A stretch of 64,000 nucleotides of DNA from positions 62,001-126,000 of IMG/VR virus record IMGVR_UViG_3300031952_000001, one strand, 5' to 3'. Of this stretch, positions 47,714 to 62,805 are shown piece by piece. The translations under genes and the position numbers were made by a program. Within the stretch, counting starts at the first letter, position 1. The number at the start of each line of letters is the position of its first letter. The notes under the pieces were generated by a model. It made no database searches, had not been told where the DNA came from, and saw only the letters and a program-made list of their open reading frames with translations.

Positions 47714-47741
47714 TTGACACTTCGCAAGTGATGGTTAGATT
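47714..47741 (+). promoter_or_regulatory. early-type promoter
   Basis: TTGACA-N16-TAGATT. Confidence 0.7.
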
Positions 47742-47758
47742 GGCCGTGGAGGGTTCAG

Positions 47759-48073
47759 ATGGTTAAAGCTGCGGGCAGGATGCACGGGTCCTTCGAGGAG
47801 CGGATGTTGAACAACCTGGAGAAGAGCACCAAGAAGAAGCGGTCGGGTGGGAAGCTCACGCGACAGCAGGTGATCCGCGCGCTGAAACGTCTCGAACGGG
47901 GCTGGCCCGAAGACCTATGGATCTTCGCAGCGGATTCGCAGTTGCATTTGATGGAGAAAAAAGACGGCTCCCACGCAATGACGGACAAGGAATCTCATTG
48001 GGGGGAGGGCGTCGATAGAGTGTTCATAGTTGATAGTTTTGATGGCATCGACGCTTCTGGAGGAGACTGGTAA
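47759..48073 (+). CDS. hypothetical protein
   Basis: First gene after the promoter. Confidence 0.6.
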   Translation: MVKAAGRMHGSFEERMLNNLEKSTKKKRSGGKLTRQQVIRALKRLERGWPEDLWIFAADSQLHLMEKKDGSHAMTDKESHWGEGVDRVFIVDSFDGIDASGGDW

Positions 48074-48075
48074 CC

Positions 48076-48990
48076 ATGCGTGAGGCCTTCATCACAGGCA
48101 AGGATTTCAAGAGGGATGCTCTTGAGATCATCGAGCGGTGCAACGAGATCCTGAACGAGTTCGCCGCTCAGGGCATAGACCTGTCCTTGCGCGGTCTCTA
48201 CTACAGGCTCGTCGCCCGGGGGTACATCCCCAACACCGACCAGAGCTACAAGCGCATCGGCAACATCGTGAGCGATGCTCGGCTCGCCGGCCTGATCGAC
48301 TGGGACCGCATCATCGACCGCGTCCGCGAGACCGTGACCCCGTCGCACTGGGAGAGCCCGGCCGAGATCGTTCGGGTAGCTGCCCGGCAGTTCGCCATCG
48401 ATAAGTGGGAGAACCAGCCGACACGGGTCGAGGTGATCGCTGAGAAGGATGCTGTTTCCAGCATCTTGGAGCCGGTGTGCCGCGAGCTGGACATCCCATA
48501 CACCGCGAACCGTGGGTACGCCTCCTCGTCCTTGATGTACCAGCGGGGCAAGGCCCTCGGGAAGATCCTGCGTGGAAGCCTGGAGAGGGGCGGTGGTCAG
48601 CACGTCCTGGTGCTCTACTTCGGCGACCACGATCCGAGTGGACTCGATATGGACAGGGACGTCGAGGATCGCCTTAGGCAGTTCGCGAAAACCAGTCAAT
48701 GCACTCACGAGCTGAAGGTGGTTCGGCTCGCGCTGACCTGGCCGCAGATCGAGGAGTACGAGCCCCCGGCGAACCCGGCCAAAGTCACAGACTCTCGCGC
48801 TGCCTCGTACATCACTCGGCATGGCGACGAGTCGTGGGAGCTGGACGCTCTGGACCCCATAGTCCTGAGTAATCTGGTGCGGAAGCACGTCCTGGAGGTC
48901 CGGGACGAGGAGCTGTGGGACGAGGCCGTAGAGCGCGAAAACGAGATGCGCAGCAAGCTGGGTGCAGCCATCGAGGCCATGGAGGACTAG
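48076..48990 (+). CDS. Topo VI-A/Spo11-like (Mini-A type) wHTH-Toprim protein
   Basis: LSLRGLYYRL (candidate catalytic Tyr), VIAEKDA, YFGDHDPSG, WELDAL. Confidence 0.7.
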   Translation: MREAFITGKDFKRDALEIIERCNEILNEFAAQGIDLSLRGLYYRLVARGYIPNTDQSYKRIGNIVSDARLAGLIDWDRIIDRVRETVTPSHWESPAEIVRVAARQFAIDKWENQPTRVEVIAEKDAVSSILEPVCRELDIPYTANRGYASSSLMYQRGKALGKILRGSLERGGGQHVLVLYFGDHDPSGLDMDRDVEDRLRQFAKTSQCTHELKVVRLALTWPQIEEYEPPANPAKVTDSRAASYITRHGDESWELDALDPIVLSNLVRKHVLEVRDEELWDEAVERENEMRSKLGAAIEAMED

Positions 48991-48991
48991 G

Positions 48992-49417
48992 ATGAGCCAC
49001 CCCGACGAACCGAGGTTCAACTACCCGCCGTGCCCTACTTGCGGAGGTAAGCAGGTTCGCATGAGCGCAACCGTTGCCAATCCGATCTGCCCGGTCTGCA
49101 TGCTCGACCAGGCCAAGTTCAAGGCTCTCGGAATCCCCAAGGAGGTTCTCGAAGAGGATACCCCGGCAGCGATTGCCCGAGAGTACGAGCAAAGGAAGGG
49201 TAGGATGCCCGTCTACCTGGAAGTCAAGCGCATCACCATCGTCCGCTCCGGGACGGACAAGGTGATCCTGCATGTCGGTCTCCCTGAGGGCTGCTACCCG
49301 TTCAAGGGGGATGCCTCGGTGACCATGGACGTGGCGCAGGGAAACGGAGTGGCCTACTGCCTGGATCACTTCCCTGGCGTACCCATCGAGGATCTGACTC
49401 ATCTGAAGGAGGGCTAA
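48992..49417 (+). CDS. zinc-finger hypothetical protein
   Basis: CPTC ... CPVC. Confidence 0.6.
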   Translation: MSHPDEPRFNYPPCPTCGGKQVRMSATVANPICPVCMLDQAKFKALGIPKEVLEEDTPAAIAREYEQRKGRMPVYLEVKRITIVRSGTDKVILHVGLPEGCYPFKGDASVTMDVAQGNGVAYCLDHFPGVPIEDLTHLKEG

Positions 49418-49418
49418 G

Positions 49419-49769
49419 ATGTCGAACGTGTTGATTCTCGAAGCGTCTGTGATCAAGGAGCACCTCAAGGACTTCAAGGGCGATCTGAAGGAGAAGCTGC
49501 GCTTCGCGATGCAGGAAGCTCACAAGGGTGTGGTCGGCATCGCGATCCTCTCTCCCGACGAGAAGTTCCGGGCTGCGGTCGCGGCTACGATCCTGGCCTC
49601 CGAGGGTGAGGAGAAGGAGCGCCTGGAGTGGGAGTCGAAGTGCCTCCAAGCCTTGTCCGCCGGGATAAGTGGCCTTCCGGTGAACATAGGGTTCGTTCTG
49701 GAGGAGGGTACATCACGGGGGTGGGAGCCTCTGGGCTTCCTGGCTCTCTGGAGAGAGGTGGTGGGGTAG
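49419..49769 (+). CDS. hypothetical protein
   Basis: Operon-coupled ORF. Confidence 0.6.
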   Translation: MSNVLILEASVIKEHLKDFKGDLKEKLRFAMQEAHKGVVGIAILSPDEKFRAAVAATILASEGEEKERLEWESKCLQALSAGISGLPVNIGFVLEEGTSRGWEPLGFLALWREVVG

Positions 49770-49771
49770 GC

Positions 49772-49954
49772 ATGGAAAAAGACTGCACCCACTGCAAGCC
49801 CAGCGTCTGCCCTCTCTGCCAGGGCTGGGGTGAGGTACGCGATCCCAACCGAGCCGCAGGGCTCCAAGGCTCCTACCAGACGGACAAGAAGGTGGTCTGC
49901 CCGGCGTGTACCGGTACCGGAGTTGTCTGGCCTCCGTGTTCAGAAGGATGTTAG
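49772..49954 (+). CDS. DnaJ-type zinc-finger mini-protein
   Basis: CPLCQGWG, CPACTGTG. Confidence 0.6.
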   Translation: MEKDCTHCKPSVCPLCQGWGEVRDPNRAAGLQGSYQTDKKVVCPACTGTGVVWPPCSEGC

Positions 49955-49962
49955 ATCACCTC

Positions 49963-49990
49963 TTGACTCACTGAGTAGTATGGTTACATT
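49963..49990 (+). promoter_or_regulatory. early-type promoter
   Basis: TTGACT-N16-TACATT. Confidence 0.75.
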
Positions 49991-50021
49991 GGGGTTGTGG
50001 CCGAGTGCAAGGAGGTCTGCG

Positions 50022-50420
50022 GTGGCTGAGATGTTCGATATTGAGGATGTTGTGCCCTCCACGCCGGAGGAGCTTCGCCGTCAGGAGATCGACGAGCTGA
50101 AGGCTGGCTGGGCCTCGGACCCTTGTTTCGACATCGAGGATACCGAGGGCTTCGAGGATGTCCGAGAGGAGCTGGACAGCTTCCGTGTCGAGATGGAATA
50201 CAAGTGGGCGGAAGAGAAGGAAACCAGGCTCCGCCATTTGGCAAAGAAGTTCGGGTTCAACCTCGTAGGGGATGGGTTGTATGAGGGGGACACCCCCACC
50301 CACGTCATCCCCAGGATGTTCGCTTCGGAAATGGAGAAGCTCCTCGACCGCATCAATGGTCTGGAGGACAGGCTCGAACGGGTTGAGAACAGGATCGACG
50401 GTATAGAGGGGAACGACTAG
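50022..50420 (+). CDS. acidic hypothetical protein
   Basis: SD GGAGGT before GTG. Confidence 0.6.
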   Translation: MAEMFDIEDVVPSTPEELRRQEIDELKAGWASDPCFDIEDTEGFEDVREELDSFRVEMEYKWAEEKETRLRHLAKKFGFNLVGDGLYEGDTPTHVIPRMFASEMEKLLDRINGLEDRLERVENRIDGIEGND

Positions 50421-50687
50421 ATGGGCACGAACTACTACATCGGTGACCTCACGGTAGATGATGACGAGGATGACCCCAAGTTCCACATCGGGAAGGTGTG
50501 TACCCTTCATGAAGGACGGCTGCACTTCGTCTGGGCGCAGCGGATGACCAAGGCCCTCAAGGCTCGGATCGCGGAGAAGGGGGTCCTTGATGACTGCGGT
50601 AGGCGCTACAACGAAGCGGAGTTCCGTGACGTGCTCAACGATTGCCACACTTCCGACTTCAATAGTGCCGGCAAGAAGTTCTGCTGA
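50421..50687 (+). CDS. hypothetical protein
   Basis: MGTNYY..FHIGK start; operon-coupled. Confidence 0.65.
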   Translation: MGTNYYIGDLTVDDDEDDPKFHIGKVCTLHEGRLHFVWAQRMTKALKARIAEKGVLDDCGRRYNEAEFRDVLNDCHTSDFNSAGKKFC

Positions 50688-50753
50688 CCTCTTGACTTCC
50701 TAACAAACAGTGGCTATATAGTTCAGCAGGGCTCGCACTATCAAGGAGAGGGC

Positions 50754-51530
50754 ATGGCAACGAAGAAAAAGACGACCAAGAAGGACAAGGGGTTGCTCTC
50801 GGAGATCCTGCGGGATGACCGGGACAAGGAGATCGAGGTCCTGAAGGAGGAGGTCGAGCGGGTGAGCCTCGCCAACTTGGATCTCGACCGACGCCTCCAG
50901 TCCATGACGGGAGCCTGGACCGTCAGCAATCAAGATCGGCGTCAGGAGTGCGAAGACCACACCGCGGCCTTGCGCCGGCTCAACACCAACCACGCCGAGG
51001 CGACCCAGAAGAACCAGGAGCTGCTGGACTCCAAGAACCGAGAGATCGCCAAGCTGAGGGAGCGCATCAAGGCGTACGAGAGCTGGGTGAGCAGCATCCG
51101 GAGGCTGGACCTTATGATGCTCCCGGCGGAGTCGGCTCTCTCCCACACGGACATGTCGTTGAGCCTGCTCATTTCGTCTCTGAAGGGTGCGACCTTGGAG
51201 CAGGCGATGCAGGATCTCGGGTACATCGAGACGGTGTTCGGCTTCGAGGCTCCCAGGACCTCCAAGTTCATCGTTCATCTCACGAAGACGGACGGGCTCT
51301 ACAAGAGCGTGGAGGGATCGCAGCGTCAGCCTTCCTCGACCCAGATCTACGCGATCAAGGAGTTGCGCCAACATCTCAATATCGGGCTGAAGGACGCCAA
51401 GGAGATCACGGACACCCTCTACGAGGGGAAGCCCAGCGAGATCGAGTTCTCCAGCCGCGAGGGCGCGGAGAAGGTGGCGGAAGCCCTGCGGATCTGCGGG
51501 TACTTCTACGTCGCCATCATCGAGAGGTAG
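50754..51530 (+). CDS. coiled-coil protein with a C-terminal ribosomal protein bL12 (L7/L12) CTD-like domain
   Basis: IYAIKELRQHLNIGLKDAKEITD..SREGAEKVAEALR. Confidence 0.65.
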   Translation: MATKKKTTKKDKGLLSEILRDDRDKEIEVLKEEVERVSLANLDLDRRLQSMTGAWTVSNQDRRQECEDHTAALRRLNTNHAEATQKNQELLDSKNREIAKLRERIKAYESWVSSIRRLDLMMLPAESALSHTDMSLSLLISSLKGATLEQAMQDLGYIETVFGFEAPRTSKFIVHLTKTDGLYKSVEGSQRQPSSTQIYAIKELRQHLNIGLKDAKEITDTLYEGKPSEIEFSSREGAEKVAEALRICGYFYVAIIER

Positions 51531-51533
51531 GAC

Positions 51534-52364
51534 ATGCTCAAGAAGATAGTACCCATCGAGCGTTCGCAGAAAGGCGGACTCCCCGGGGAGACTGTCGAGC
51601 GTCACCCGTCGTTCGGGCTGGTGGGGTTGTTCAAGACCTGCGGATCTCAGCCGCTCTTCGGGAGCCCGTTGGAGGTCAACAACGGCTACGTCACCATCAA
51701 GATCAGCCACGGGGAGAAGATCCACTCGGGGCACGGGTACGACCGGTACTTCCCCCGCAACACCGTCGTCGAGGTCATGATCAGCGAGGCCCAGTTCGCT
51801 CAGCTCATCACGAGCTGGAACTCGGGCGAGGGCGTTCCCTGCACGTTCGACTTCATCGCCCCTGGTGGCGAGGGAAGCGTGCCGGGCTGGCCGGACGACG
51901 ACTACGTCTCCGACACCGAGCAGGTCCGCAACGAGTTCAAGGACCGGATCTCCGACGTGAAGAAGAAGGTCGAGACCGCGATCACCTCGATGAACGCGAT
52001 CCTGGGGAAGAAGGGCGCGCTCACGATTGCGGAGAAGGATTCGATCCGAGAGGGCATGATCGCCCTCTCCCGGCTCCTCGACGACTCCGCCCCCTTCATG
52101 GCCGAGCAGTTCGTCGAGGTGACCGAGAAGGTCGTCCAGAAGGCCATGACCGAGATCGATGCCTTCGTCACCAAGGTCGCCGTCCACACGGGCCTGGAGA
52201 GCCTGAAGAAGATGGAGGTCTCGGGGCTGAAGCTCGCGGATGGTAGCACACCGAAGAGACTCTCGACGGGGGATCTGGAACTCGATGAGAACCTCATGTA
52301 CAGGCACGTCGACAAGGTCACGTCCGCCGATCCCGAGCAGGGCTGGGAGGACGACGATGCGTGA
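51534..52364 (+). CDS. hypothetical protein
   Basis: Long ORF with typical codon usage. Confidence 0.7.
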   Translation: MLKKIVPIERSQKGGLPGETVERHPSFGLVGLFKTCGSQPLFGSPLEVNNGYVTIKISHGEKIHSGHGYDRYFPRNTVVEVMISEAQFAQLITSWNSGEGVPCTFDFIAPGGEGSVPGWPDDDYVSDTEQVRNEFKDRISDVKKKVETAITSMNAILGKKGALTIAEKDSIREGMIALSRLLDDSAPFMAEQFVEVTEKVVQKAMTEIDAFVTKVAVHTGLESLKKMEVSGLKLADGSTPKRLSTGDLELDENLMYRHVDKVTSADPEQGWEDDDA

Positions 52365-52719
52365 CGAACGGAAGTGTAGCTGCGGCGGGATCGACATCGG
52401 GGTCGGTGTGATGCACGAGCCGATCTGCGAGCTGAATGACGCGGGGTGGATACACAAGCTGGAAGAGGACATCAGAGACCTAGAGGGTAGGGGTAGTTCC
52501 GGTCGAACCGTCTTCATCGTCTCTCGCCACAAGTGCACGACTCCGGACGGTGACCACCTCTTCGAGATCCAAGGTGTGTTCACCTCCGAGGAGAAGGCCA
52601 TCGCGGCTTGCCGTGACGAGAACTACGGCTACGGACCCGAGGTGCTCGACCAGGAGCTTCCGCACGAGAGCACTCCCTGGCCGGGCTACGTTTACCCGCA
52701 CGCGCCCAAGGTCGATTAG
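52357..52719 (+). CDS. hypothetical protein
   Basis: Overlaps the previous stop. Confidence 0.6.
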   Translation: MRDERKCSCGGIDIGVGVMHEPICELNDAGWIHKLEEDIRDLEGRGSSGRTVFIVSRHKCTTPDGDHLFEIQGVFTSEEKAIAACRDENYGYGPEVLDQELPHESTPWPGYVYPHAPKVD

Positions 52720-52722
52720 CAC

Positions 52723-52750
52723 TTGACAGCGCCTCCCAGGTGGTTACATT
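52723..52750 (+). promoter_or_regulatory. early-type promoter driving a non-coding transcript
   Basis: TTGACA-N16-TACATT. Confidence 0.75.
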
Positions 52751-52755
52751 TAACA

Positions 52756-52917
52756 CTGAACGGAGCGCAGAGACATCACGCTCCAACAGGACCAGGGCAC
52801 CTGTTCAGAATGCCCTAAGGGCTTCGGCCCTGTCACTGAGGAGGCCGGAATAGTCACCCGGCCACTACCCTCGGCCCCTGGCGGTGTTCTCCTTGTCGCC
52901 GCCGGGGGCCATTTTTA
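52756..52917 (+). ncRNA. unassigned ~160-nt structured RNA with a possible pseudoknot and its own terminator
   Basis: Five helices, a C(UUCG)G tetraloop, no ORF between promoter and terminator. Confidence 0.6.
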
Positions 52918-52918
52918 T
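52873..52918 (+). terminator. intrinsic terminator
   Basis: 12-bp stem GGCCCCTGGCGG/CCGCCGGGGGCC followed by ATTTTTAT. Confidence 0.7.
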
Positions 52919-52932
52919 GAATCCAAAGTCCG

Positions 52933-53430
52933 ATGTGGTATAAAAAGGCCATGCGCGGCATCCCCCCAGAAGGTTTCGTCCGTCTCGCCAGGTTCGTGGC
53001 GCAGCTCGACGAACAGCTCTCGATAGAGTGGACGTCGCCGGATCTCTCCGACGAGGTGGATGAGTACACAGAGAACCCTTGGAACCAGGTGTACATGAAA
53101 GGCAGGGGGATCGAGCTGGGGAGCGCCGACGAGGTGATCGAGTTCCTGAGCACCGGAGCCATGACCCCATTCTCCGCTGATCAGCTCCCCCAAGTCGAGA
53201 ACGTGACCTTGGGTGGGGAAGCCTTTGCCTCTGAGATAGAAGATCCTGGATACCGGGAGTCCTTCGACTCGATGGAGGAGGAGCTGTCGACGAAGGGGTC
53301 CATCACCCTCCCGGCTCCGATCCTGTTGAAGCTCGGGGGTGCCTACTACTGCTTTGCGGGAAACCGGCGGATCAACCTGGCCTTCAAGTATGATCTCCCC
53401 TTGGAGGTCTGGCTCGTTGAGGTTCCATGA
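52933..53430 (+). CDS. acidic protein, possibly ParB/Srx-like fold
   Basis: PAPILL..YYCFAGNRRINLA. Confidence 0.4.
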   Translation: MWYKKAMRGIPPEGFVRLARFVAQLDEQLSIEWTSPDLSDEVDEYTENPWNQVYMKGRGIELGSADEVIEFLSTGAMTPFSADQLPQVENVTLGGEAFASEIEDPGYRESFDSMEEELSTKGSITLPAPILLKLGGAYYCFAGNRRINLAFKYDLPLEVWLVEVP

Positions 53431-53612
53431 ACCGCGAGGATGATGATCCCACTCGTCCGATTACGTTAATCCCCAGACCCCGCTGCGCCAAGCCTCCAGA
53501 GTCCCCCTGCGCCTTCAAGGACGAGGAGGGGTTCTGCTCTAAAAGATATACCACTTGCCGATGGAAAGCTCTCTCGAACCCTCCATCTAGGTCGAAACGC
53601 GATCAATCCTGA
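53427..53612 (+). CDS. small Cys-rich hypothetical protein
   Basis: ATGA overlap; last + strand gene before the strand switch. Confidence 0.45.
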   Translation: MNREDDDPTRPITLIPRPRCAKPPESPCAFKDEEGFCSKRYTTCRWKALSNPPSRSKRDQS

Positions 53613-53697
53613 GCCCTCCAGGAGCCGTTCTAAGGCCCTGCCGGCGTTCAGGCTGTCCGAGTGCGGGTTTTTGGTCGAAAGGCTTAGAGGGGCTGCG

Positions 53698-53907
53698 TCA
53701 GGAGTTCCTGTGCCGGGTAGCGTTGTACTCCTCCCAAGCGGTCGAGAATTCTGAGTAGTTTTCCCAGACTGCGTAGAGGTGGCCGCACTTGGGGCAGAAC
53801 TTGTTCTGATCTTCGGGCTTGGTCCAGAAAGACGAGTGCGGACCCGGGTGATCTTCCCAATGGTATCCGCAACTTAGACAGCGGAGCTTGGCGAGCTTCT
53901 CCTTCAA
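53698..53907 (-). CDS. small zinc-ribbon protein
   Basis: CLSC ... CPKC; SD GGAGG before TTG. Confidence 0.65.
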   Translation of the reverse strand: MKEKLAKLRCLSCGYHWEDHPGPHSSFWTKPEDQNKFCPKCGHLYAVWENYSEFSTAWEEYNATRHRNS

Positions 53908-53916
53908 GGACCTCCC

Positions 53917-54228
53917 TCAGTGCCCGTAATTGAAGCCGTACCTGAACCTTCGAATCTTGTCACCGTCTTCGTGGTCTGTGAACGTGAACTCACGTCCAAA
54001 GCTGCCTCAACAGCCCTCGGCGGCGATCTCCTTGTAGGCCTCCATCTCTTTCTCGTTCCCCACCTCCGCGAGGCGAAAGTGGCTGGTGCACGCATAGCCC
54101 TCCCGGTGGACCTTGGCGATCCGGGCGGTTAAGAAGTCCGCGAGCTTTGGGTTCTTGTACCGCTTGAAGATCCACTCCCAGGTGGGACCGAGGTAGGAGT
54201 CCCGGTCGAAGCTCTCCTTGCGGCTCAT
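53917..54228 (-). CDS. candidate selenoprotein (UGA at 54009-54007 read as Sec; ...AEGC-U-GSF...GFNYGH)
   Basis: Reading through the TGA gives 29 more sense codons ending at the next gene's SD; a SECIS-like hairpin follows the UGA. Confidence 0.65.
53976..54001 (-). promoter_or_regulatory. bacterial SECIS-like hairpin
   Basis: mRNA UGA-GGCAGCUUU-GGACGUG-AGUU-CACGUUC: 7-bp stem, apical loop 16 nt after the UGA, G at loop position 2. Confidence 0.55.
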
Positions 54229-54231
54229 GGT

Positions 54232-54426
54232 TTAGACCTTCTCATCGCCGGGAACCGCCACGCCCGCCTTGATGATCTCCAGGCAACGTTCGTAGGTGCA
54301 CCTCTGGAGTCCGCAACAGAACGTGCACCAAGGGTTCCTCGAAACCTCCTTGGATCTGTAGCGGCAGGTCTTGGCCTCTTTCCGCCAGTCCAGGACAGCC
54401 TTGCCGTACTTTCGTTTCGGGATCAT
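54232..54426 (-). CDS. small Cys-rich protein
   Basis: Operon-coupled ORF. Confidence 0.55.
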   Translation of the reverse strand: MIPKRKYGKAVLDWRKEAKTCRYRSKEVSRNPWCTFCCGLQRCTYERCLEIIKAGVAVPGDEKV

Positions 54427-54429
54427 CGT

Positions 54430-55038
54430 TCACCTCACTTGGCCCCTGCCGGTACCGTTGCAGTCGGGGCAGGTCGTGTACCCCGGAGTCACGCAGCATT
54501 CGATCCCCGGGAGAGATGCTCCTTGCGCCCCGTAGGCCTGTCCGCTTCCCTTGCATCGAGGACAGCTCCGGTAGTAGACGTCGAGGTCCTCATCGCCCAG
54601 CTCTTCCCGTAGCCGCGCGTTTTCGGTTTCCAGGGAGGCCAGTGACTTCTCACCGAGCCGAGCTGCCGCCTGGAGCGCCTCGATTCGGGATTCCCGGAGA
54701 CGCATTCCCGCTATGGCAGAATTGAGTTCTCTTTGGGCGAGTTCCAGAGAGAGGCTGATCTCTGCCGTCATCGCACGCGCAGCGGCGAGGACGTGCTCCG
54801 CAGCCTCACCGATAGTCTCGTTGTCGTCCGCCGCCAGCGCAGACCGGGCTTCCTCGATCTGCGTTTTGCAAGCCATGAGGTCATCGAAGACGAGGTCCCG
54901 CTCCTCTTGGATCTGCTTGATCTCGGCCTTGTACTGGGCCTCGATCTCGTGGATCGCGATCCACACCCGACCTTGAGGGACGGTTGTGCCGTACAGAAGA
55001 TCCGTGATCCTGTTTCTGATCTCGTTGAGGTCCATCAT
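54430..55038 (-). CDS. coiled-coil protein with a C-terminal DnaJ-type zinc finger
   Basis: CPRCKGSG, CPDCNGTG. Confidence 0.7.
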   Translation of the reverse strand: MMDLNEIRNRITDLLYGTTVPQGRVWIAIHEIEAQYKAEIKQIQEERDLVFDDLMACKTQIEEARSALAADDNETIGEAAEHVLAAARAMTAEISLSLELAQRELNSAIAGMRLRESRIEALQAAARLGEKSLASLETENARLREELGDEDLDVYYRSCPRCKGSGQAYGAQGASLPGIECCVTPGYTTCPDCNGTGRGQVR

Positions 55039-55289
55039 CCCACCTTCTTTGCCTTGCCCCAGCAGTCGTCACACAGTTCGAAAAGCTCGTCGTCGCACCC
55101 GTAGCACCACCCGACCGTGCGCCCACAACCCGGGCACACGAACGTCCCGCCGCAGTCGTGGCCCCCGGGCCGGAACCTGCCCTTCTTGTCCCTCTCGGGC
55201 GGGACGAACGGGGTGAGCAGGTAGCGTCGATAGTAGCAGCCCGGCTGATGAATGGCTTGAGGCACTAGCCGTTTCCCTTCTCCATCAAT
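55035..55289 (-). CDS. small Cys-rich protein (start uncertain)
   Basis: CPGC..WCYGC..LCDDC; 3' part of track ORF 55035..55445. Confidence 0.45.
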   Translation of the reverse strand: MDGEGKRLVPQAIHQPGCYYRRYLLTPFVPPERDKKGRFRPGGHDCGGTFVCPGCGRTVGWCYGCDDELFELCDDCWGKAKKVG

Positions 55290-55572
55290 CCACCTCCTTC
55301 GGCACCGTGCGGAACGCCTCGCAGAAGTTCTCGTAATCGACCGTGTTGTCGCCCGTACCGCTCGGGAGCTGCCGCAGCCGGTTGATGGCGTCCTCGAACG
55401 TCGTGGTGTACGAGCACCACTCGTCGTAGAGGCGCACGACACCATCCTTCATGAGATCCTCGGTGCAGCAGACGCAGGTCGGCCCCATGTCACCGAACCC
55501 CATCCCCACCCTGTTGAGCTGCCGCGTTAGTTCGTCCCGGAGCTTCTCTCGCTGCGATCTGATTTCTCCCAC
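55285..55572 (-). CDS. hypothetical protein
   Basis: Operon-coupled ORF. Confidence 0.6.
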   Translation of the reverse strand: MGEIRSQREKLRDELTRQLNRVGMGFGDMGPTCVCCTEDLMKDGVVRLYDEWCSYTTTFEDAINRLRQLPSGTGDNTVDYENFCEAFRTVPKEVD

Positions 55573-55581
55573 AGTGCCCTC

Positions 55582-55767
55582 CTACAGATCCAGCAGCTCG
55601 TCGAGGGCTGCCTTCACGTCCGGGTGCTTCGGGCACTCGGGGTTGAAACAGGCCTTGCCGGTCGGCTCGTTCGGATCGAGCCCCTTCTCGGAGCACTCCT
55701 TGGCCGTGTAGGCATCCCGGATGTAGAGCGTCGTCAGCTTCCCTCCGCAGCGGTCACAGTTCTTCAT
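55582..55767 (-). CDS. small zinc-finger protein
   Basis: CDRC ... CFNPEC. Confidence 0.6.
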   Translation of the reverse strand: MKNCDRCGGKLTTLYIRDAYTAKECSEKGLDPNEPTGKACFNPECPKHPDVKAALDELLDL

Positions 55768-55770
55768 GGT

Positions 55771-55992
55771 CTACTCCTCGTCCTCGTGATTGTCGCCGTA
55801 GCGGTCCTCATCGTATTCATCGTCATCGGGACCCTCATCGTCATCGGGACCCTCATCGTCATCGGGACCCTCATCGTCATCGGGACCCTCATCGTCATCG
55901 GGACCCTCATCGTCATCGGGACCCTCATCGTCATCGGGGCCCTCATCGTCATCGGGGCCCTCATCGTCATCGGGACGTTTGTAGATGTCCAT
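55771..55992 (-). CDS. 73-aa hyper-acidic repeat protein (PDDDEG)x8-PDDDEY
   Basis: SD AGGAG; first gene after promoter 56040-56067. Confidence 0.7.
   Translation of the reverse strand: MDIYKRPDDDEGPDDDEGPDDDEGPDDDEGPDDDEGPDDDEGPDDDEGPDDDEGPDDDEYDEDRYGDNHEDEE
55813..55974. repeat. 18-bp tandem repeat (8 full copies plus 1 degenerate)
   Basis: Unit [AG]CCCTCATCGTCATCGGG, head to tail with no spacers. Confidence 0.97.
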
Positions 55993-56039
55993 GATCTTCT
56001 CCTTGTTCAGCGAGGGTCAGCTCGCTTCTCCTACTTGGG

Positions 56040-56067
56040 AATATAACTACTATAGTGAGGCTGTCAA
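56040..56067 (-). promoter_or_regulatory. early-type promoter
   Basis: TTGACA-N16-TATATT. Confidence 0.75.
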
Positions 56068-56070
56068 GAG

Positions 56071-56340
56071 CTAACCGCAGAAATCCTGCATGAACTTCGA
56101 GCGCCTCGAAGCGTAGGCTTGCGCTAGCTCGTACACGTAAGCATTTGCGTACTCGGGACCGTGCTTGTCTGTGAGGAGTTTTCTCAGTTGGTTCAGTGCC
56201 GTGGAGACGGAGTCACTCCCGGAGAACGACCGCGCCATGAGCATCATGAAGACCTTGAATTCCGGGGGCACATTGACCCCGGGAGACTTTACGACCGGCT
56301 CACTTGGTCTTGTGGAGTCGGTCAAGCAGGGCTTTTTCAT
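56071..56340 (-). CDS. hypothetical protein
   Basis: ORF ends just before a promoter. Confidence 0.5.
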   Translation of the reverse strand: MKKPCLTDSTRPSEPVVKSPGVNVPPEFKVFMMLMARSFSGSDSVSTALNQLRKLLTDKHGPEYANAYVYELAQAYASRRSKFMQDFCG

Positions 56341-56608
56341 CCTTCAGTTCCTCCGGTGTCGGGACGTGGCAAGTGCGCCTATACGTGTTCAAATTGCAGT
56401 TGCAACCCGCGCCGAATGCGAGATAGAATTTCATACGCTCTTTCACCTTCGTATCGGGCTCTTCGACGTACTTTCCGCACACCCACCGAGTGCCGTCCCA
56501 CAAGAGGTGCGGGCACCCGTGCCACGCTGCCCAATCTTCGAGCTGGTAGAAACTGCACGGACTTTTGCGGCAACAAAATCCGCAACCTATACACTCGTTC
56601 GATTTCAT
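56300..56608 (-). CDS. YkgJ-like cysteine-cluster protein
   Basis: CIGCGFCCRKSPC..CPHL..CGKY. Confidence 0.6.
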   Translation of the reverse strand: MKSNECIGCGFCCRKSPCSFYQLEDWAAWHGCPHLLWDGTRWVCGKYVEEPDTKVKERMKFYLAFGAGCNCNLNTYRRTCHVPTPEELKDEKALLDRLHKTK

Positions 56609-56844
56609 TCTTGCACTTCGACTTCATACTCTTCTATGATGTGGGCGTTGATAAGAACCCATGCCGTACTTCTGATATCCGACGAACCCCGGCGGAGGTA
56701 ATATTCTCTAACCCAACGGAATGCCGGAGCCCATTGTCCGTCTATGAGTGCGAGCTGGCAGTCGTCGGGGAGCCCGAGCTTCTCTGCTCTTTCTAAGAGG
56801 TCGTCTCCTTGGACGATACGGTGCATCTTGACTTTCAAAGTCAC
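56605..56844 (-). CDS. hypothetical protein
   Basis: Overlap-coupled ORF. Confidence 0.55.
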   Translation of the reverse strand: MTLKVKMHRIVQGDDLLERAEKLGLPDDCQLALIDGQWAPAFRWVREYYLRRGSSDIRSTAWVLINAHIIEEYEVEVQE

Positions 56845-56999
56845 TTTGCTCTCGTCGGCTGGAGGTTGAGGACGTCACCCAATTTCGGCAACCAGGATCG
56901 TACCCTCTTCTCGACCGGCTCTACCGGCTCGATCTCCTCGACCAGCTCTTCGAGCGCCAGCTTGTCACTCTTCGCACGTCGTTTCTTCTCGGTGTCCAC
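56841..56999 (-). CDS. 52-aa hypothetical protein (not in the ORF track)
   Basis: SD AGGAGG, GTG start, MDTEKKRRAK...; follows promoter 57017-57044. Confidence 0.55.
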   Translation of the reverse strand: MDTEKKRRAKSDKLALEELVEEIEPVEPVEKRVRSWLPKLGDVLNLQPTRAK

Positions 57000-57016
57000 G
57001 CTGTCCTCCTACCTGG

Positions 57017-57044
57017 AATGTAACCACTCGGGAGAGGCTGTCAA
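57017..57044 (-). promoter_or_regulatory. early-type promoter
   Basis: TTGACA-N16-TACATT. Confidence 0.8.
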
Positions 57045-57050
57045 GGGCTA

Positions 57051-57272
57051 CTACCAGGAAAGAATACCCACCTTGCGCGTGCCCTCTCCGTCACTCACGT
57101 CGTCCATTGGGAATCCGTCATTTACCCAGCCTTTATCGGACTCCCTACGAAGGCTCTGTACCTCACAGGAATGCTTCCCTGCATGACCGGCTTTCCGTGT
57201 GCAATAGAACTCCACGAGGGCATCGGGGCCTATCGATGCATTCTTTACGAATTGGTCGCGGCACAGTTTCAT
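57051..57272 (-). CDS. hypothetical protein
   Basis: Operon-coupled ORF. Confidence 0.5.
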   Translation of the reverse strand: MKLCRDQFVKNASIGPDALVEFYCTRKAGHAGKHSCEVQSLRRESDKGWVNDGFPMDDVSDGEGTRKVGILSW

Positions 57273-57514
57273 TTCAGCCCCCTATCTGCCCCGACGAACA
57301 GACCCATTGCTGCCGCCATGACCAGCCGCGCGTTGGCTCGCTTCTTGTCCTTCTCGTGCCACACCTTCCGCTGGGATTCCTTCTCCTCTTCGGTCAGGCC
57401 CTCCCACCACTTGCGCGCGTCTTCTCTCTTGGCCTCCTCGGCGGCGGCCTTGCGCGCGATGCTCTGAGCTGCACGCTCCTCTCGGGTTGCCGCTCGACGT
57501 CGCGCCTCGCCCAT
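57269..57514 (-). CDS. basic hypothetical protein
   Basis: MGEARRR start; operon-coupled. Confidence 0.6.
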   Translation of the reverse strand: MGEARRRAATREERAAQSIARKAAAEEAKREDARKWWEGLTEEEKESQRKVWHEKDKKRANARLVMAAAMGLFVGADRGLK

Positions 57515-57518
57515 CGGT

Positions 57519-57794
57519 CTACCTCACCGCGTTGCCGGTCTTCGTGAACCGGACCTTCTCCAGAGCCACGAGCACGTCTCCCAGCTCCCGCCGGGCCATC
57601 TCCATGACGCGGATCGCCTCGGCTACCTGCGCCTCGTCGGTCGCGCCCTCGTCGAACGTGTCCTTGACCTCCCGGGCGATGAAGAGTGCCAGCGTGTCCC
57701 CCAGGCTGCCCTCGTCGCCTTCCTCGAAGGACGCCTTCACCAGCCCGTCCGGGTATCCCTCGTCCACGATCTCGATCAGCTTGTTCAGGTCCAT
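57519..57794 (-). CDS. acidic hypothetical protein
   Basis: SD AGGAG; follows a promoter. Confidence 0.7.
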   Translation of the reverse strand: MDLNKLIEIVDEGYPDGLVKASFEEGDEGSLGDTLALFIAREVKDTFDEGATDEAQVAEAIRVMEMARRELGDVLVALEKVRFTKTGNAVR

Positions 57795-57843
57795 GTTCGT
57801 CTCCTTGTTCAGTGCGAGTAGTCACCCCGCATTTCCTTCTACC

Positions 57844-57871
57844 AATGTAACCATGCCTGTCGGGGAGTCAA
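57844..57871 (-). promoter_or_regulatory. early-type promoter with a leader hairpin (loop GTGACTA)
   Basis: TTGACT-N16-TACATT; hairpin at 57814-57830. Confidence 0.8.
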
Positions 57872-57889
57872 GGGCCGGGTCGGTCGATT

Positions 57890-58642
57890 CTACTGTCCCT
57901 CGTAGGAGTACATCTCGGCCTCGGAAGCGAGGTTCGAACGGAACTCCTCGCGCTTCTCGTCGATGGCCTCGACGACCTTCTCCTCGAACTCCTCGGGAGT
58001 GAGCCCCTGCTCGACGTAGCTCTCGGTCAGCTCGGTGTACCACCAAGCCTCGTCGGCTACGGGGTCGGGGCACTGGAGATCTTTCTTGTCCCTCTCGGCG
58101 TTCTCCTTGGCCTCCGCGCGCAGTCGGGTCATGACCTCTTCGGTCAGCTCCTTCAGGTGCACGTCGTCGATGTCGAGTGTCTCCAGGGCCTCCTCCCGCC
58201 AGGTGTCCTCGTCGAAGTCCCTGTCGGTGCCGTCCAGGCTGTCCGCGCATTCCCGGCACCCGTCCGCCCGCTCCTGGAGCATCTCGCCCGTGCTGCCCTG
58301 CTGGAGCCCTTCGGGCATGTTGTTCAGCTTCTCCTCGCAGTCGTCCGCGAGCGAGTTGTACTCTTCCACGAGGTTCTCGATCTCGCTCACCAGCTCGTCC
58401 AGATCCGTGATGTTCGTCAGCTCGGACACCCGGTCGTTCAGATCGTAGACCTGCGACAGGAACTCCGAGTTCGTCTTGTCCGACGCCTTGAAGTCGCAAT
58501 CCCCATGGGTGCAACGGATCTTCCGACCACCGAACTTGATCTTGAGCCACCGGTAGGGATCGCCCTTTCTGATTTCGACCCCGCACTTCCCGCAGGTGCC
58601 CTGGTCCTTCTGAGCCTTCGCGACGTGGTTGATCTTCGGCAT
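57890..58642 (-). CDS. zinc-finger plus acidic coiled-coil protein
   Basis: CGKC..CTHGDC; very acidic C-terminal half. Confidence 0.75.
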   Translation of the reverse strand: MPKINHVAKAQKDQGTCGKCGVEIRKGDPYRWLKIKFGGRKIRCTHGDCDFKASDKTNSEFLSQVYDLNDRVSELTNITDLDELVSEIENLVEEYNSLADDCEEKLNNMPEGLQQGSTGEMLQERADGCRECADSLDGTDRDFDEDTWREEALETLDIDDVHLKELTEEVMTRLRAEAKENAERDKKDLQCPDPVADEAWWYTELTESYVEQGLTPEEFEEKVVEAIDEKREEFRSNLASEAEMYSYEGQ

Positions 58643-58643
58643 C

Positions 58644-58856
58644 TCAATCCTCCTCCGGCTCTCCCGCTACCGGCAACCCGAACAAGAATCCCGGACCGTT
58701 GCCTTCCTCATCGCGCGACACCTCGATGACGAACTCCTCACCCTCCTTGGTTCGCACGGTGAACCGGGGGAACTCCGCACCCCCGTCCACATCCACAATC
58801 GTCGCCCCTTCGAGCTGGGCATAGTACCTCTTGTAGAACTCGCTCCTGCGGTGCAT
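58644..58856 (-). CDS. hypothetical protein
   Basis: SD GGAGG; follows a promoter. Confidence 0.65.
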   Translation of the reverse strand: MHRRSEFYKRYYAQLEGATIVDVDGGAEFPRFTVRTKEGEEFVIEVSRDEEGNGPGFLFGLPVAGEPEED

Positions 58857-58890
58857 CTCAGTCCTCCAGGTTCTCTTCTTGCCTACCCCT

Positions 58891-58918
58891 AATGTAACCA
58901 TCCCTAGCAGGGAGTCAA
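58891..58918 (-). promoter_or_regulatory. early-type promoter
   Basis: TTGACT-N16-TACATT. Confidence 0.8.
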
Positions 58919-58922
58919 GGGG

Positions 58923-59159
58923 CTATTTGTACTTCGTGGTGAGGGCGCGGAGCGCCTCCTGCCCACACAGGGAGATCCGGCTCGCCCACATGCCGACCAG
59001 GCTCTCGGCGGCGCTCGCCGCGTGCTGTAGGTAGGTCGCCTCGTCGTATGCCTCTATGTACCGATCCTCTTCGGTCGTCGCCGCGAGCGCCCTGTCGTGT
59101 GCGAGACGCGCCCGCTCCCGGTACATCTCATACGTCTCCTCGTGCGTCGTGACGGGCAT
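58923..59159 (-). CDS. hypothetical protein
   Basis: SD GGAGG before MPVTT. Confidence 0.55.
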   Translation of the reverse strand: MPVTTHEETYEMYRERARLAHDRALAATTEEDRYIEAYDEATYLQHAASAAESLVGMWASRISLCGQEALRALTTKYK

Positions 59160-59160
59160 C

Positions 59161-59373
59161 TCAGTCCTCCTCGCCGCTCTCGACGATGTCTTCGATGCGG
59201 AAGGTGGCGGTCCACTCCTTGCCGCAGTCGTGGCACTCGACGGTGACCTTCTTGACGTCGTCCTCGTCGGCACTGTCCTCGACCGTGTGCTCCCAGGTGT
59301 TGTACTTCCCGCAGTACGGGCACTTCGATCCGCCGCTCGCCAGGCACTCGTCTTTGAAGTTCATCTTCAACAT
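59161..59373 (-). CDS. small zinc-ribbon protein
   Basis: CPYC ... CHDC. Confidence 0.65.
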   Translation of the reverse strand: MLKMNFKDECLASGGSKCPYCGKYNTWEHTVEDSADEDDVKKVTVECHDCGKEWTATFRIEDIVESGEED

Positions 59374-59392
59374 GTTCGTTTCTCCTGCTTGG

Positions 59393-61252: not shown

Positions 61253-61705
61253 CTAGGCCCCCTTCTCGACCGGCTTTCCGACCAGACAATCCCATGTCTC
61301 GGAGTTGCAGACGAGGTACTCGATGTGCTCCTCCATGACCTCTTCGTAAAGCCTCTGCGCCTCTTCGGGGTCGTCTGCCTTGGGGCGCGGCTCGACCGTG
61401 TAGGGGTGCCCCTTGATCCTGCCGTCGAAGTATTCGACGCGCGGCTCCTCGCGGTTCGCTTCCCGGAGGTACTCGTCCACCGCTTCCAGCTCTTCGTCGG
61501 TCAGGTCGCGCGTCGTGGTGAACGTGTGGCCGATGTAGTAGCACTCCTTGTTCGCTTGGAACGAGCAAATATGCACGTCCAGGTTCGCGTCGAAGAGGTG
61601 CGCCGAGAAGATCCGGTCCACACCGTCCGGGATGCCGTTGTAGAACTCCGTCTCATCGTCGATGAAGATCCGCAGATCCATCGGGATTTTCGTCTTCTCG
61701 TCCAT
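61253..61705 (-). CDS. acidic hypothetical protein
   Basis: SD AGGAG; follows a promoter. Confidence 0.7.
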   Translation of the reverse strand: MDEKTKIPMDLRIFIDDETEFYNGIPDGVDRIFSAHLFDANLDVHICSFQANKECYYIGHTFTTTRDLTDEELEAVDEYLREANREEPRVEYFDGRIKGHPYTVEPRPKADDPEEAQRLYEEVMEEHIEYLVCNSETWDCLVGKPVEKGA

Positions 61706-61752
61706 CGGGTTCTCCTTGTCGTTGCCGGCGGGTAGTCATCCCGCCTATCCCC

Positions 61753-62541: not shown

Positions 62542-62760
62542 CTAGTCGTCCTCGTCGTCGAGGGGGGAGAGCTGACCGACGATCTCTGCGATCCAACGCA
62601 GACCCCCATTATCCGCGAGATATTCGAATTGCCCCTCGGGGCCGCTGTTGTTGATCGTCGCAGCCTCTTCGTTTTTGAGATCGCGCACGTACTCGTCGAG
62701 CGCGCCCTCGGATAGTTTCAGAGCCCGCTGTCGCAGAGCTTCTTTTCTGTCGTTGTTCAT
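62542..62760 (-). CDS. hypothetical protein
   Basis: SD AGGAG; follows a promoter. Confidence 0.65.
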   Translation of the reverse strand: MNNDRKEALRQRALKLSEGALDEYVRDLKNEEAATINNSGPEGQFEYLADNGGLRWIAEIVGQLSPLDDEDD

Positions 62761-62805
62761 CGTCTTCTCCTTGTTGTGAGTCGGGTAGTCATCCCGCCTT
62801 GCCCC

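What the first reader, a model, noticed from the sequence alone, without database searches (positions are those of the whole stretch)
52723..52918. Stand-alone early ncRNA gene: promoter, pseudoknotted ~160-nt RNA, terminator
Seen: consensus promoter with no SD or ORF behind it. Helices: CTGAAC/GTTCAG (52756/52803), GGAGCG/CGCTCC, AACAGG/CCTGTT (competes with the first, so a possible switch), loop AGGGCA pairing with TGCCCT (H-type pseudoknot), AGGGC-TTCG-GCCCT, GGCCGG/CCGGCC, then a 12-bp terminator. Inference: an abundant early RNA acting as regulator, protein decoy (RNA anti-CRISPR or antitoxin mimic) or ribozyme.
Basis: partly seen in the sequence, partly recalled or inferred. Interest (0 to 1): 0.76.

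Follow-up and report, generated by a model that had tools for sequence, protein, structure and literature searches.

The report
Phage small RNA aimed at early leaders
This is a real, conserved, pseudoknotted RNA gene of about 160 nt in an uncultured 212-kb phage, matching no catalogued RNA family, and its two unchanging loops are complementary to the leader hairpin and ribosome-binding site of a subset of the phage's own early mRNAs, so it most likely switches off their translation.

Summary
Window 52723-52750 is one of about 28 near-identical sigma-70-type promoters in a 211,982-bp sediment phage. It is the only one followed by a structured, non-coding stretch of about 160 nt and a 12-bp intrinsic terminator.

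Seven homologues were found in related phage contigs, giving five lineages. They keep P1, P2, the pseudoknot, P4, P5 and the terminator through compensatory changes: 12 pairs changed on both sides against at most 1 in slid controls, and 4 of the 6 pseudoknot pairs covary. The proposed CTGAAC/GTTCAG switch helix is not conserved. Rfam gives no match. In a sister phage the RNA body differs at 1 of about 160 positions, while its flanks cannot be aligned.

Two loops do not vary:
- The P5 loop, UAGUCA, is the exact complement of the loop of a leader hairpin, UGACUA.
- The terminator loop, UUCUCCUUGU, complements the Shine-Dalgarno region, ACAAGGAGAA.

Both target motifs sit in the same class of early mRNA leaders, in all four genomes or contigs where leaders could be read.

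Best explanation: a trans-acting antisense RNA that represses a set of early genes through two contacts. This resembles the P1/P7 c4 RNA and the OxyS-fhlA interaction in mechanism but is not a member of either. Expression and function are untested, because no RNA run was listed. The role of the 5' pseudoknot domain is unknown.

The parts
52723..52750 (+). Sigma-70-type promoter (TTGACA, 16 nt, TACATT), a member of the phage-wide early promoter family.
   Evidence: It is kept in front of every full-length homologue.
52757..52916 (+). Predicted transcript of about 160 nt. The 5' end is inferred from the -10 box and the 3' end from the terminator's U-run.
   Evidence: The covariance model R1 matches once per genome. 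There is no expression data.
52762..52784 (+). P1 hairpin: GGAGCG, an 11-nt variable loop, CGCTCC.
   Evidence: Four different arm pairs occur in the homologues and all pair, for example GGGTCGG/CCGGCCC and GAGGCGA/TCGCCTC.
52785..52816 (+). H-type pseudoknot. S1 is AACAGG/CCTGTT (52785-90 / 52800-05). S2 is loop AGGGCA (52794-99) pairing with TGCCCT (52811-16).
   Evidence: In S2, 4 of 6 pairs changed on both sides and 95% of cells pair. Five distinct arm pairs all pair. S1 covaries once the register is set by hand, AGAGGG/CCCTCT.
52818..52831 (+). P4 hairpin: AGGGC-UUCG-GCCCU.
   Evidence: Compensatory variants GGAGC/GCTCC and GGGCCG/CGGCCC.
52838..52872 (+). P5 hairpin: GGCCGG 52843-48 / CCGGCC 52858-63. 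The loop at 52849-57 holds the invariant UAGUCA (52851-56). An outer GAGG/CCUC helix (52838-41 / 52869-72) is present in only some lineages.
   Evidence: Stem positions 2 and 3 show G-C, C-G, U-A and C-G, U-A. UAGUCA is invariant in all homologues. It is the complement of the leader hairpin loop UGACUA.
52873..52916 (+). Intrinsic terminator: a 12-bp G+C stem, a 14-nt loop (52885-98) and U5. The loop core UUCUCCUUGU is the predicted anti-SD seed.
   Evidence: 98.8% paired, with several G-U pairs that fit only the + strand. The loop core TCCTTGTC is invariant. GTTCTCCTTGTCG is a 13-nt perfect complement of the leader at 61721-61709(-).
52919..52944 (+). Conserved box just after the terminator: GAATCC, about 10 nt, then TGGTATAAA. 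It may be an extended -10 promoter for the next gene.
   Evidence: Kept after the terminator in 6 of the 7 sequences aligned, although the next gene differs. TGNTATAAA occurs only twice in the genome. Function inferred.
61703..61752 (-). Predicted target 1: an early leader with hairpin GGCGGG-AUGACUA-CCCGCC (UGACUA at 61738-33) and CGACAAGGAGAAC (61721-09), ending at the AUG at 61705.
   Evidence: It has the best accessibility-corrected energy of all leaders, -18.0 kcal/mol.
62758..62805 (-). Predicted target 2: an early leader with loop UGACUA (62791-86) and ACAAGGAGAA (62774-65).
57792..57843 (-). Predicted target 3: an early leader with GGGUGACUA (9 nt complementary to the P5 loop and stem) and ACAAGGAGA (57808-00).
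   Evidence: The orthologous leaders in G001, L030 and L032 keep both motifs.
55990..56039 (-). Predicted weaker target: an early leader with ACAAGGAGAA (56006-55997) whose hairpin loop is CUGACCC, matching only 4 nt of the P5 loop.

Best explanation
This is a stand-alone gene for a small non-coding RNA of about 160 nt in a large uncultured phage. The host RNA polymerase is expected to transcribe it from one of the phage's roughly 28 near-identical sigma-70-type promoters, ending at a strong intrinsic terminator.

The RNA has two parts:
- **A 5' domain** made of hairpin P1, an H-type pseudoknot (P2 plus the loop pairing) and hairpin P4. Its shape is conserved but its sequence is not.
- **A 3' domain** with two hairpins whose loops never change: the P5 loop, UAGUCA, and the terminator loop, UUCUCCUUGU.

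I propose that the 3' domain is an antisense module acting in trans on one class of the phage's own early mRNAs ('class B' leaders). The P5 loop would kiss the 7-nt loop (A/C)UGACUA of the leader hairpin. The terminator loop would pair with the single-stranded ACAAGGAGAA, which contains the Shine-Dalgarno sequence 5-7 nt before the AUG. This would block 30S binding and shut off the first genes of several early operons as the RNA accumulates.

**Shown:** the promoter family, the lack of an ORF, the structure with covariation, the conservation, and the two complementarities and their recurrence.

**Inferred:** that the RNA is made, when it is made, that the contacts form, and that the effect is repression.

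The 5' pseudoknot domain has no assigned role. Stability or binding of a protein are guesses.
For: **A real RNA gene.**
- The promoter family.
- It is the only copy without an SD and start codon behind it.
- Fold z = -4.45.
- Homologues were found behind the same promoter in L011, L012/L030, L016, L026, L025, G001 and L032.
- 93% of cells pair. Twelve pairs changed on both sides, against 0-1 in six slid controls. Four of six pseudoknot pairs are compensatory.
- Indels are not multiples of three, and G-U pairs fit only the + strand.
- There is one copy per genome.
- Between G000 and G001 the RNA body differs at 1 position. The promoter differs at about 9 of its 28 positions, and the flanking genes are unalignable or 84% identical.

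**The targets.**
- The leaders fold into hairpins that present UGACUA and leave the SD free.
- Longest perfect complement between the RNA and the 70-nt leaders: 13 nt in G000 (2 of 200 shuffles reach it), 13 nt in G001 (1 of 200) and 14 nt in L030 (0 of 200). It always joins the terminator loop to the SD region.
- Cognate pairs are longer than non-cognate pairs (13/13/10 against 9/9/14). The bases flanking the shared core differ in step: UUGUCG with CGACAA in G000, UUGUCCUCGC with GCGAGGACAA in L030.
- Leaders carrying the complements of both loop cores: 3 of 27, 2 of 22, 1 of 6 and 3 of 18 in four genomes or contigs. Only 0-3 of 5000 motif shuffles reach this.
- Four of the five best accessibility-corrected energies belong to class-B leaders.
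- Duplex energies are -26.9 and -29.6 kcal/mol for terminator loop with SD, and -6.2 to -14.9 kcal/mol for the kissing contact.
Against: - There is no expression evidence at all. No RNA run was listed, and the phage is known only from sediment metagenomes.
- Perfect complements of 12-13 nt between the RNA and the whole genome are expected by chance about 1-4 times, and two others fall in coding regions. The case therefore rests on where the matches fall and on their recurrence.
- Any C/U-rich loop will match Shine-Dalgarno sequences.
- In lineage L032 the longest perfect run is only 10 nt, which 26 of 200 shuffles reach.
- Class-B leaders within a genome are paralogues, and G000 and G001 are close kin, so the counts are not independent.
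- The two contacts are not colinear, so a topology with two separate helices has to be assumed.
- The L025/L026 lineage has UUAUCCUUGU in the loop. No leaders from that lineage could be obtained to see whether the targets follow.
- The model does not explain why an elaborate pseudoknot domain is conserved.
Confidence: 0.55

Rival explanations
1. It is a protein-binding or decoy RNA. The conserved pseudoknot domain, the invariant loops, or both are recognition sites for a host or phage protein (a chaperone, an RNase, a defence sensor or a polymerase factor). On this view the complementarity to the leaders is a by-product.
For: A conserved multi-helix fold in which shape is kept but sequence is not is typical of protein-binding RNAs. 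The antisense model leaves the 5' domain unexplained. The invariant loops could equally be protein contacts.
Against: It does not account for two separate invariant loops each matching a separate motif in the same leaders in four genomes. No partner protein can be named. No GGA-type or repeat-type decoy motif is conserved.
Confidence: 0.17
2. It is a cis-acting leader, attenuator or riboswitch that controls read-through into the gene after the terminator (52951-53427).
For: The order promoter, structured leader, terminator, ORF is the classical one. The next ORF starts 35 nt after the U-run. H-type pseudoknots occur in several riboswitch classes (own knowledge).
Against: The downstream gene differs between homologues: a 159-aa ORF here, the 61-aa Cys-rich ORF in G001 and a protein of 264-273 aa in L011, L012, L016, L025 and L026. 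The only candidate alternative helix is not conserved. No conserved anti-terminator pairing was found. A conserved -10-like box follows the terminator. There is no riboswitch match in Rfam.
Confidence: 0.08
3. It is only the structured 3' end, terminator or insulator of the upstream rightward operon, and the promoter in front of it is incidental.
For: No terminator separates the upstream genes from the element, so upstream transcripts would also end here. It sits where the rightward and leftward blocks converge.
Against: The promoter is kept in front of every full-length homologue even though the upstream gene changes. A terminator does not need five covarying helices or invariant loops. The body is near-identical between G000 and G001 while the flanks diverge.
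Confidence: 0.06
4. It is a ribozyme, an RNA anti-CRISPR or an antitoxin mimic, as the first reader also proposed.
For: Only the presence of a compact pseudoknotted fold.
Against: There is no match to any ribozyme, CRISPR-related or ToxI-type family in Rfam. There is no tandem repeat architecture. The host and its CRISPR repeats are unknown. The order of helices is not that of HDV-like ribozymes (reading).
Confidence: 0.04

Closest known systems
c4 antisense RNA of phages P1 and P7 (Citron and Schuster 1990, as summarised in PMC12197685; the Rfam family name 'C4' is from my own knowledge)
   Same: It is a phage-encoded small RNA that acts in trans on the phage's own mRNA. Short exposed segments pair with two separate target sites, one covering a ribosome-binding site. 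Specificity follows the matching sequences of RNA and target.
   Different: No sequence or structure match appeared in the Rfam scans. c4 is processed from the same transcript as its target and governs immunity in temperate phages. This RNA has its own promoter and terminator, carries an extra pseudoknot domain, is predicted to hit several early operons, and lies in a 212-kb phage of unknown lifestyle.
OxyS-fhlA two-site kissing complex in E. coli (own knowledge)
   Same: Two hairpin loops of one small RNA contact two separate sites of one mRNA. One site is at the Shine-Dalgarno sequence, and translation is repressed.
   Different: OxyS is a host stress RNA with no sequence likeness to this one. 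Here one of the contacts is loop to loop with a dedicated leader hairpin, and the other uses the terminator loop.
T4 RegA and RegB (protein translational repressor and GGAG-cutting endoribonuclease of early mRNAs; review PMC3014915 appeared but was not read, so this is from my own knowledge)
   Same: The predicted outcome is the same: post-transcriptional shut-off of a subset of early phage genes by acting at their ribosome-binding sites.
   Different: Those are proteins. Here the agent would be an RNA.
Lambda OOP and P22 sar antisense RNAs (PMC12197685)
   Same: Short phage RNAs with their own promoter and terminator that down-regulate phage genes by pairing.
   Different: Those are encoded opposite their target and are fully complementary to it. 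This RNA is encoded 3-15 kb from its predicted targets and has only short seeds.

Membership tests
Any Rfam 15 family | A covariance-model score at or above the family's gathering threshold. | tested here: not met
   The whole window gives only a tmRNA and two tRNAs elsewhere. A permissive scan of 52650-52990 gives only sX13 at 13.9 bits against a threshold of 50, E = 2.4. Scans of four homologue loci gave nothing below E = 0.3.
Trans-acting base-pairing small RNA (kind, not a sequence family) | Its own promoter and a Rho-independent terminator, with no ORF. | tested here: met
   Both signals are conserved in the homologues.
Trans-acting base-pairing small RNA (kind, not a sequence family) | A conserved, exposed seed complementary to the translation-initiation regions of its targets. 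| tested here: met
   The invariant terminator loop is unpaired in the fold. It has complements of 13, 13 and 14 nt at leader SD regions, and class-B leaders rank highest after accessibility correction. Support is weaker in L032, at 10 nt.
Trans-acting base-pairing small RNA (kind, not a sequence family) | The RNA is expressed as a discrete species and changes target expression. | not testable with these tools
   No RNA run was listed for this sequence. Only DNA contigs from sediment metagenomes hold it.
H-type pseudoknot | A hairpin loop pairs with a downstream strand, supported by compensatory changes in both stems. | tested here: met
   S2: 4 of 6 pairs changed on both sides and 95% of cells pair. 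S1 and S2 each show five arm-pair variants that pair, apart from one C-U mismatch at the outermost S1 position in G001. The loop lengths (3 nt, 0 nt, 5-7 nt) are sterically plausible, which is an inference.
c4-type phage antisense RNA (P1/P7) | Sequence and structure homology to the C4 family. | tested here: not met
   No C4 match appeared in the permissive Rfam scans.
c4-type phage antisense RNA (P1/P7) | Two exposed segments complementary to two target sites, one of them at a ribosome-binding site. | tested here: met
   UAGUCA pairs with UGACUA, and UUCUCCUUGU pairs with ACAAGGAGAA, in the same leaders. This shows that it works like c4, not that it is a member.
c4-type phage antisense RNA (P1/P7) | Processed from the transcript that also carries its target, and controls an antirepressor or immunity. 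| tested here: not met
   It has its own promoter and terminator. The predicted targets lie on the other strand, 3-10 kb away within the window, or on the same strand about 15 kb away just beyond the window's end. No antirepressor or repressor gene was recognised next to it.
Riboswitch or transcription attenuator | A conserved alternative (anti-terminator) pairing and a conserved regulated gene downstream. | tested here: not met
   The only competing helix, CTGAAC/GTTCAG, is absent from four of the five lineages. The downstream gene differs among homologues.

The most novel reading that the evidence does not exclude
The RNA is a two-domain riboregulator. The conserved 5' pseudoknot domain senses a protein or small molecule, or acts as a timing or stability device. 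It gates the 3' two-loop antisense module, so that one RNA sets the early-to-middle switch of a large phage by silencing a whole class of early operons. That would be an RNA counterpart of the T4 RegA/RegB shut-off.
Probability: 0.12. Interest if true: 0.85.

Novelty: new member of a known kind. Interest (0 to 1): 0.6.

Why it matters
Few small RNAs of large or virulent phages have a known function. Most characterised phage RNAs come from temperate coliphages and act opposite their target or on host genes (PMC12197685).

Here the sequence alone yields a new conserved RNA family with a covariation-backed pseudoknot. It also yields a concrete, falsifiable target set: four to five early leaders per genome that share a dedicated hairpin and an extended Shine-Dalgarno region.

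If confirmed, it would show that a phage can use an RNA rather than a protein to shut off part of its early programme. It would also provide a compact two-contact antisense design (kissing loop plus SD masking) that could be tested and reused in vitro even without the unknown host.

Tried and rejected
**Searches that found nothing.**
- DNA searches of the phage collection, near and distant modes: no match.
- RNA sequencing runs: none listed.
- The genome contigs pattern scan, meant to catch prophage copies: no match.
- The distant relative G002, only 57% complete: no R1 match, and a short leader at the syntenic promoter.
- Pfam and PHROGs on the predicted target genes and on the RNA's neighbours: nothing informative apart from DUF7336 upstream.

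**Leads that did not help.**
- Laying contigs from four DNA runs gave only fragments. One contig covers the RNA with a single difference, so it offered no useful variants.
- The first pattern scan returned two AT-rich gut contigs, L014 and L015. These are chance matches and were discarded.
- Contigs for P0002 and P0005, which probably carry further copies, could not be fetched because the sample files are too large.

**Readings rejected.**
- A coding reading: the only ORFs that start upstream begin before the transcript, and the indels break the frame.
- A minus-strand RBS reading of ACAAGGAGAA: no start codon follows it.
- HDV-like ribozyme topology: the order of helices differs.
- A pRNA-like loop-loop self-pairing: the two loops are not complementary to each other.
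- Functional meaning for the 16-nt identity to 58593-58608(-): it is same-sense, and only 7 nt are shared in L030.

Full report
**Context**

The window is bases 62001-126000 of a 211,982-bp IMG/VR virus record, rated 100% complete by CheckV. The record was assembled from a sediment metagenome. It has about 60% G+C and carries a tmRNA and two tRNAs. It has no close relative among 50,697 deposited phage genomes. Proteins next to the finding have only distant hits, below 32% identity, in phages of varied hosts, so the host is unknown.

**Checking the observation**

- **Promoter.** The promoter at 52723-52750 (TTGACA, 16 nt, TACATT) is real as a motif. With at most one mismatch it occurs 16 times in the window against 0.05 expected. 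It occurs 25-28 times in the genome, clustered in a region of small divergent operons.
- **What follows it.** Almost all other copies are followed within 15-50 nt by a strong Shine-Dalgarno sequence and an ATG. The copy at 52723 is not. It is followed instead by about 160 nt that fold far better than shuffles: -78.7 kcal/mol, z = -4.45, 0 of 200 shuffles as good. This stretch ends in a 12-bp G+C hairpin and a run of T.
- **ORFs.** No ORF with a start signal lies inside the transcript.

**Homologues**

I reached related contigs through the flanking proteins and through one DNA pattern scan. This gave seven further copies:

| Copy | Position | Source |
|---|---|---|
| L011 | 1016-1228 | JGI metagenome contig |
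| L016 | 1038-1252 | Logan contig |
| L012 (same contig as L030) | 4327-4535 | Logan contig |
| L026 | 685-866 | Logan contig |
| L025 | 1-172 | Logan contig, cut at the 5' end |
| G001 | 85875-86055(-) | complete 205,564-bp sister phage |
| L032 | 18874-19064(-) | JGI metagenome contig |

They fall into five lineages, 73-99% identical to the window copy.

- All full-length copies keep the promoter and the terminator.
- The genes on both sides differ. Upstream is a DUF7336 gene here, the 276-aa homologue in L011, L012 and L016, and something else in G001. Downstream is a 159-aa ORF here, a 61-aa Cys-rich ORF in G001, and a protein of 264-273 aa elsewhere.
- Between this phage and G001 the RNA body differs at one position, whereas the promoter differs at about 9 of its 28 positions. 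The neighbouring DNA is 84% identical or cannot be aligned. That points to strong constraint on the transcribed part, or to recent exchange of the cassette.
- There is one copy per genome.

**Structure**

I aligned seven sequences to covariance model R1.

- 93% of cells form standard pairs.
- Twelve pairs have changes on both sides, against 0-1 in each of six slid controls.
- The covariation score exceeds all 500 shuffles.

The pseudoknot helix is the best supported. Four of its six pairs are compensatory, and five different arm pairs all pair: AGGGCA/UGCCCU, GGGCGC/GCGCCC, GGGGG/CCCCC, GGGCG/CGCCC and GGGGCA/UGCCCC. P1, P4 and P5 also covary. P2 does so once a one-base loop indel is set right by hand.

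Several G-U pairs would be C-A on the other strand, which fixes the RNA to the + strand. The indels are of 1, 4 and 9 nt, so the stretch is not coding.

The GAGGAGG box and the outer GAGG/CCUC helix are likewise missing in two lineages.

Rfam has no match for the window copy or for the homologues.

**What stays constant**

Loop and junction sequences mostly vary. Two loops do not: UAGUCA in the P5 loop, and (G)UU-(C/A)UCCUUGUC in the terminator loop. A loop that does not vary in a terminator is unusual and calls for an explanation.

**The predicted targets**

The phage's early leaders fall into two classes. Class B has two features:
- a hairpin whose stem varies (GGCGGG/CCCGCC, GCGAG/CUCGC and others) but whose 7-nt loop reads (A/C)UGACUA;
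- about 8-15 nt further on, a single-stranded ACAAGGAGAA, 5-7 nt before the AUG (folds).

UGACUA is the exact complement of the invariant P5 loop. ACAAGGAGAA is the exact complement of the invariant terminator-loop core.

In this window the class-B leaders follow the promoters at 61780, 62833 and 57871, and more weakly 56067, all on the minus strand. A fifth lies just outside the window at genome position 129542-129565.

The tests gave these results:
- **Length of complement.** The longest perfect complement between the RNA and the set of 70-nt leaders is 13 nt in G000 (null 8.8 ± 1.1; 2 of 200 shuffles), 13 nt in G001 (1 of 200) and 14 nt in L030 (0 of 200). It always lies in the terminator loop and at the SD region.
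- **Cognate against non-cognate.** Cognate pairs beat non-cognate ones (13/13/10 against 9/9/14), because the bases beside the shared core change in step. G000 has ...UUGUCG against CGACAA... L030 has ...UUGUCCUCGC against GCGAGGACAA....
- **Both motifs together.** Leaders holding the complements of both loop cores number 3, 2, 1 and 3 in the four genomes or contigs. Only 0-3 of 5000 motif shuffles reach these counts.
- **Energies.** After correcting for accessibility, four of the five best leaders are class B, with 61780 far ahead at -18 kcal/mol.

**Limits of the target evidence**

- Genome-wide, complements of 12-13 nt arise by chance a few times, and two lie in coding DNA.
- A C/U-rich loop is biased towards matching SD sequences.
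- In L032 the perfect run is only 10 nt (26 of 200 shuffles).
- Leaders within a genome are paralogues.
- G000 and G001 are close kin.
- No leaders could be obtained for the lineage with the loop variant UUAUCCUUGU.
- Nothing shows that the RNA is made. No RNA run was listed.

**Mechanism proposed**

I propose a trans-acting antisense RNA made from an early-type promoter. It would dock on class-B leaders by a loop-loop kiss (P5 loop with the leader hairpin) and mask the Shine-Dalgarno region with its terminator loop. This would repress translation of the first genes of four or five early operons. The products of those genes have no recognisable family.

Because the two contacts are not colinear, they would form as two separate short helices, as in the OxyS-fhlA complex. 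The 5' pseudoknot domain is conserved in shape but takes no part in this pairing, and its role is open.

I put about 0.9 on 'a genuine structured RNA gene' and about 0.55 on the antisense mechanism.

**Rivals**

- **Protein-binding or decoy RNA (0.17).** This fits the conserved fold but not the double complementarity.
- **Cis attenuator or riboswitch (0.08).** This is contradicted by the changing downstream gene, the missing conserved alternative helix, and a conserved -10-like box (GAATCC, about 10 nt, TGNTATAAA) after the terminator.
- **Mere terminator or 3' end of the upstream operon (0.06).** This does not explain the conserved promoter or the five covarying helices. Upstream transcripts probably do end here as well.
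- **Ribozyme, anti-CRISPR RNA or antitoxin mimic (0.04).** No evidence supports any of these.

**Comparison with known systems**

In mechanism the closest are the c4 RNA of P1/P7, which has two exposed segments and two target sites, one at a ribosome-binding site (PMC12197685), and OxyS-fhlA (own knowledge). In outcome the closest are T4 RegA and RegB (own knowledge).

It is not a member of the C4 family. There is no model match, it has its own promoter and terminator rather than being processed from the target transcript, and it has no immunity context.

I therefore file it as a new member of the known kind 'phage-encoded trans-acting antisense RNA'. It forms a new sequence and structure family with an added pseudoknot domain.

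**Verdict**

The RNA itself is solid, and the target model is specific and cheap to test. But it rests on sequence alone, in an uncultured phage.

Noticed in passing
window 47714-63673, continuing to genome position about 131000: An array of about 28 near-identical sigma-70-type promoters (TTGACAGCC, about 9 nt, GGTGGTTACATT) drives short divergent operons of small ORFs. Their leaders fall into two conserved classes: class A reads ...GAACAACCGGGAGG..., and class B has a hairpin with loop UGACUA followed by ACAAGGAGAA.
   Followed up: partly
window 52919-52944: A box (GAATCC, about 10 nt, (C)ATGNTATAAA) directly after the RNA's terminator is kept in 6 of the 7 sequences aligned, although the downstream gene differs. 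TGNTATAAA occurs only twice in the 212-kb genome. It may be an extended -10 promoter that travels with the RNA cassette.
   Followed up: partly
window 52788-52803 (+) and 58593-58608 (-): A 16-nt same-sense identity (AGGACCAGGGCACCUG) links the RNA's P2/pseudoknot loop to the coding sequence of an early 250-aa protein (E about 0.04). The orthologue in L030 shares only 7 nt with its own RNA, so this is probably chance or a local conversion. It remains unexplained.
   Followed up: partly
window 39345-39713, 40193-40265, 41030-41108: The phage encodes a one-piece tmRNA (82 bits; tag peptide ADADVIPFPKMAVPSLQREAA) plus tRNA-Met(CAT) and tRNA-Pro(TGG).
   Followed up: no
window 34409-35593 (+): A TnpB-like ORF (OrfB_IS605 plus the Cas12f1-like TNB domain; PHROG transposase, E = 1.6e-86) lies inside the phage genome. 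A similar gene sits in the related contig L018 at 1072-2280. Any associated guide RNA was not looked for.
   Followed up: no
window 1456-3795 (+): A RecA/UvsX-like gene of 779 aa has its N-terminal RecA core (aa 39-212) and its RecA C-terminal domain (aa 719-771) separated by about 500 residues. This coincides with a G+C dip to 0.50 at 2001-4000, so an intein or other inserted element is likely.
   Followed up: partly
window 53427-53612 (+); G001 downstream of its RNA; L012:5380-5634: A small Cys-rich protein (about 61 aa, ...PRCAKPPESxCAFxDEEGFC...) is the last rightward gene before the convergence point in all three phages where that region could be read.
   Followed up: no
L009:5290-5500 (record G002): Tandem repeats of about 30 nt (GGAGTCCAGCCAGCCGCACGTGG...) lie inside the ORF that follows the syntenic promoter of the distant relative.
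   Followed up: no
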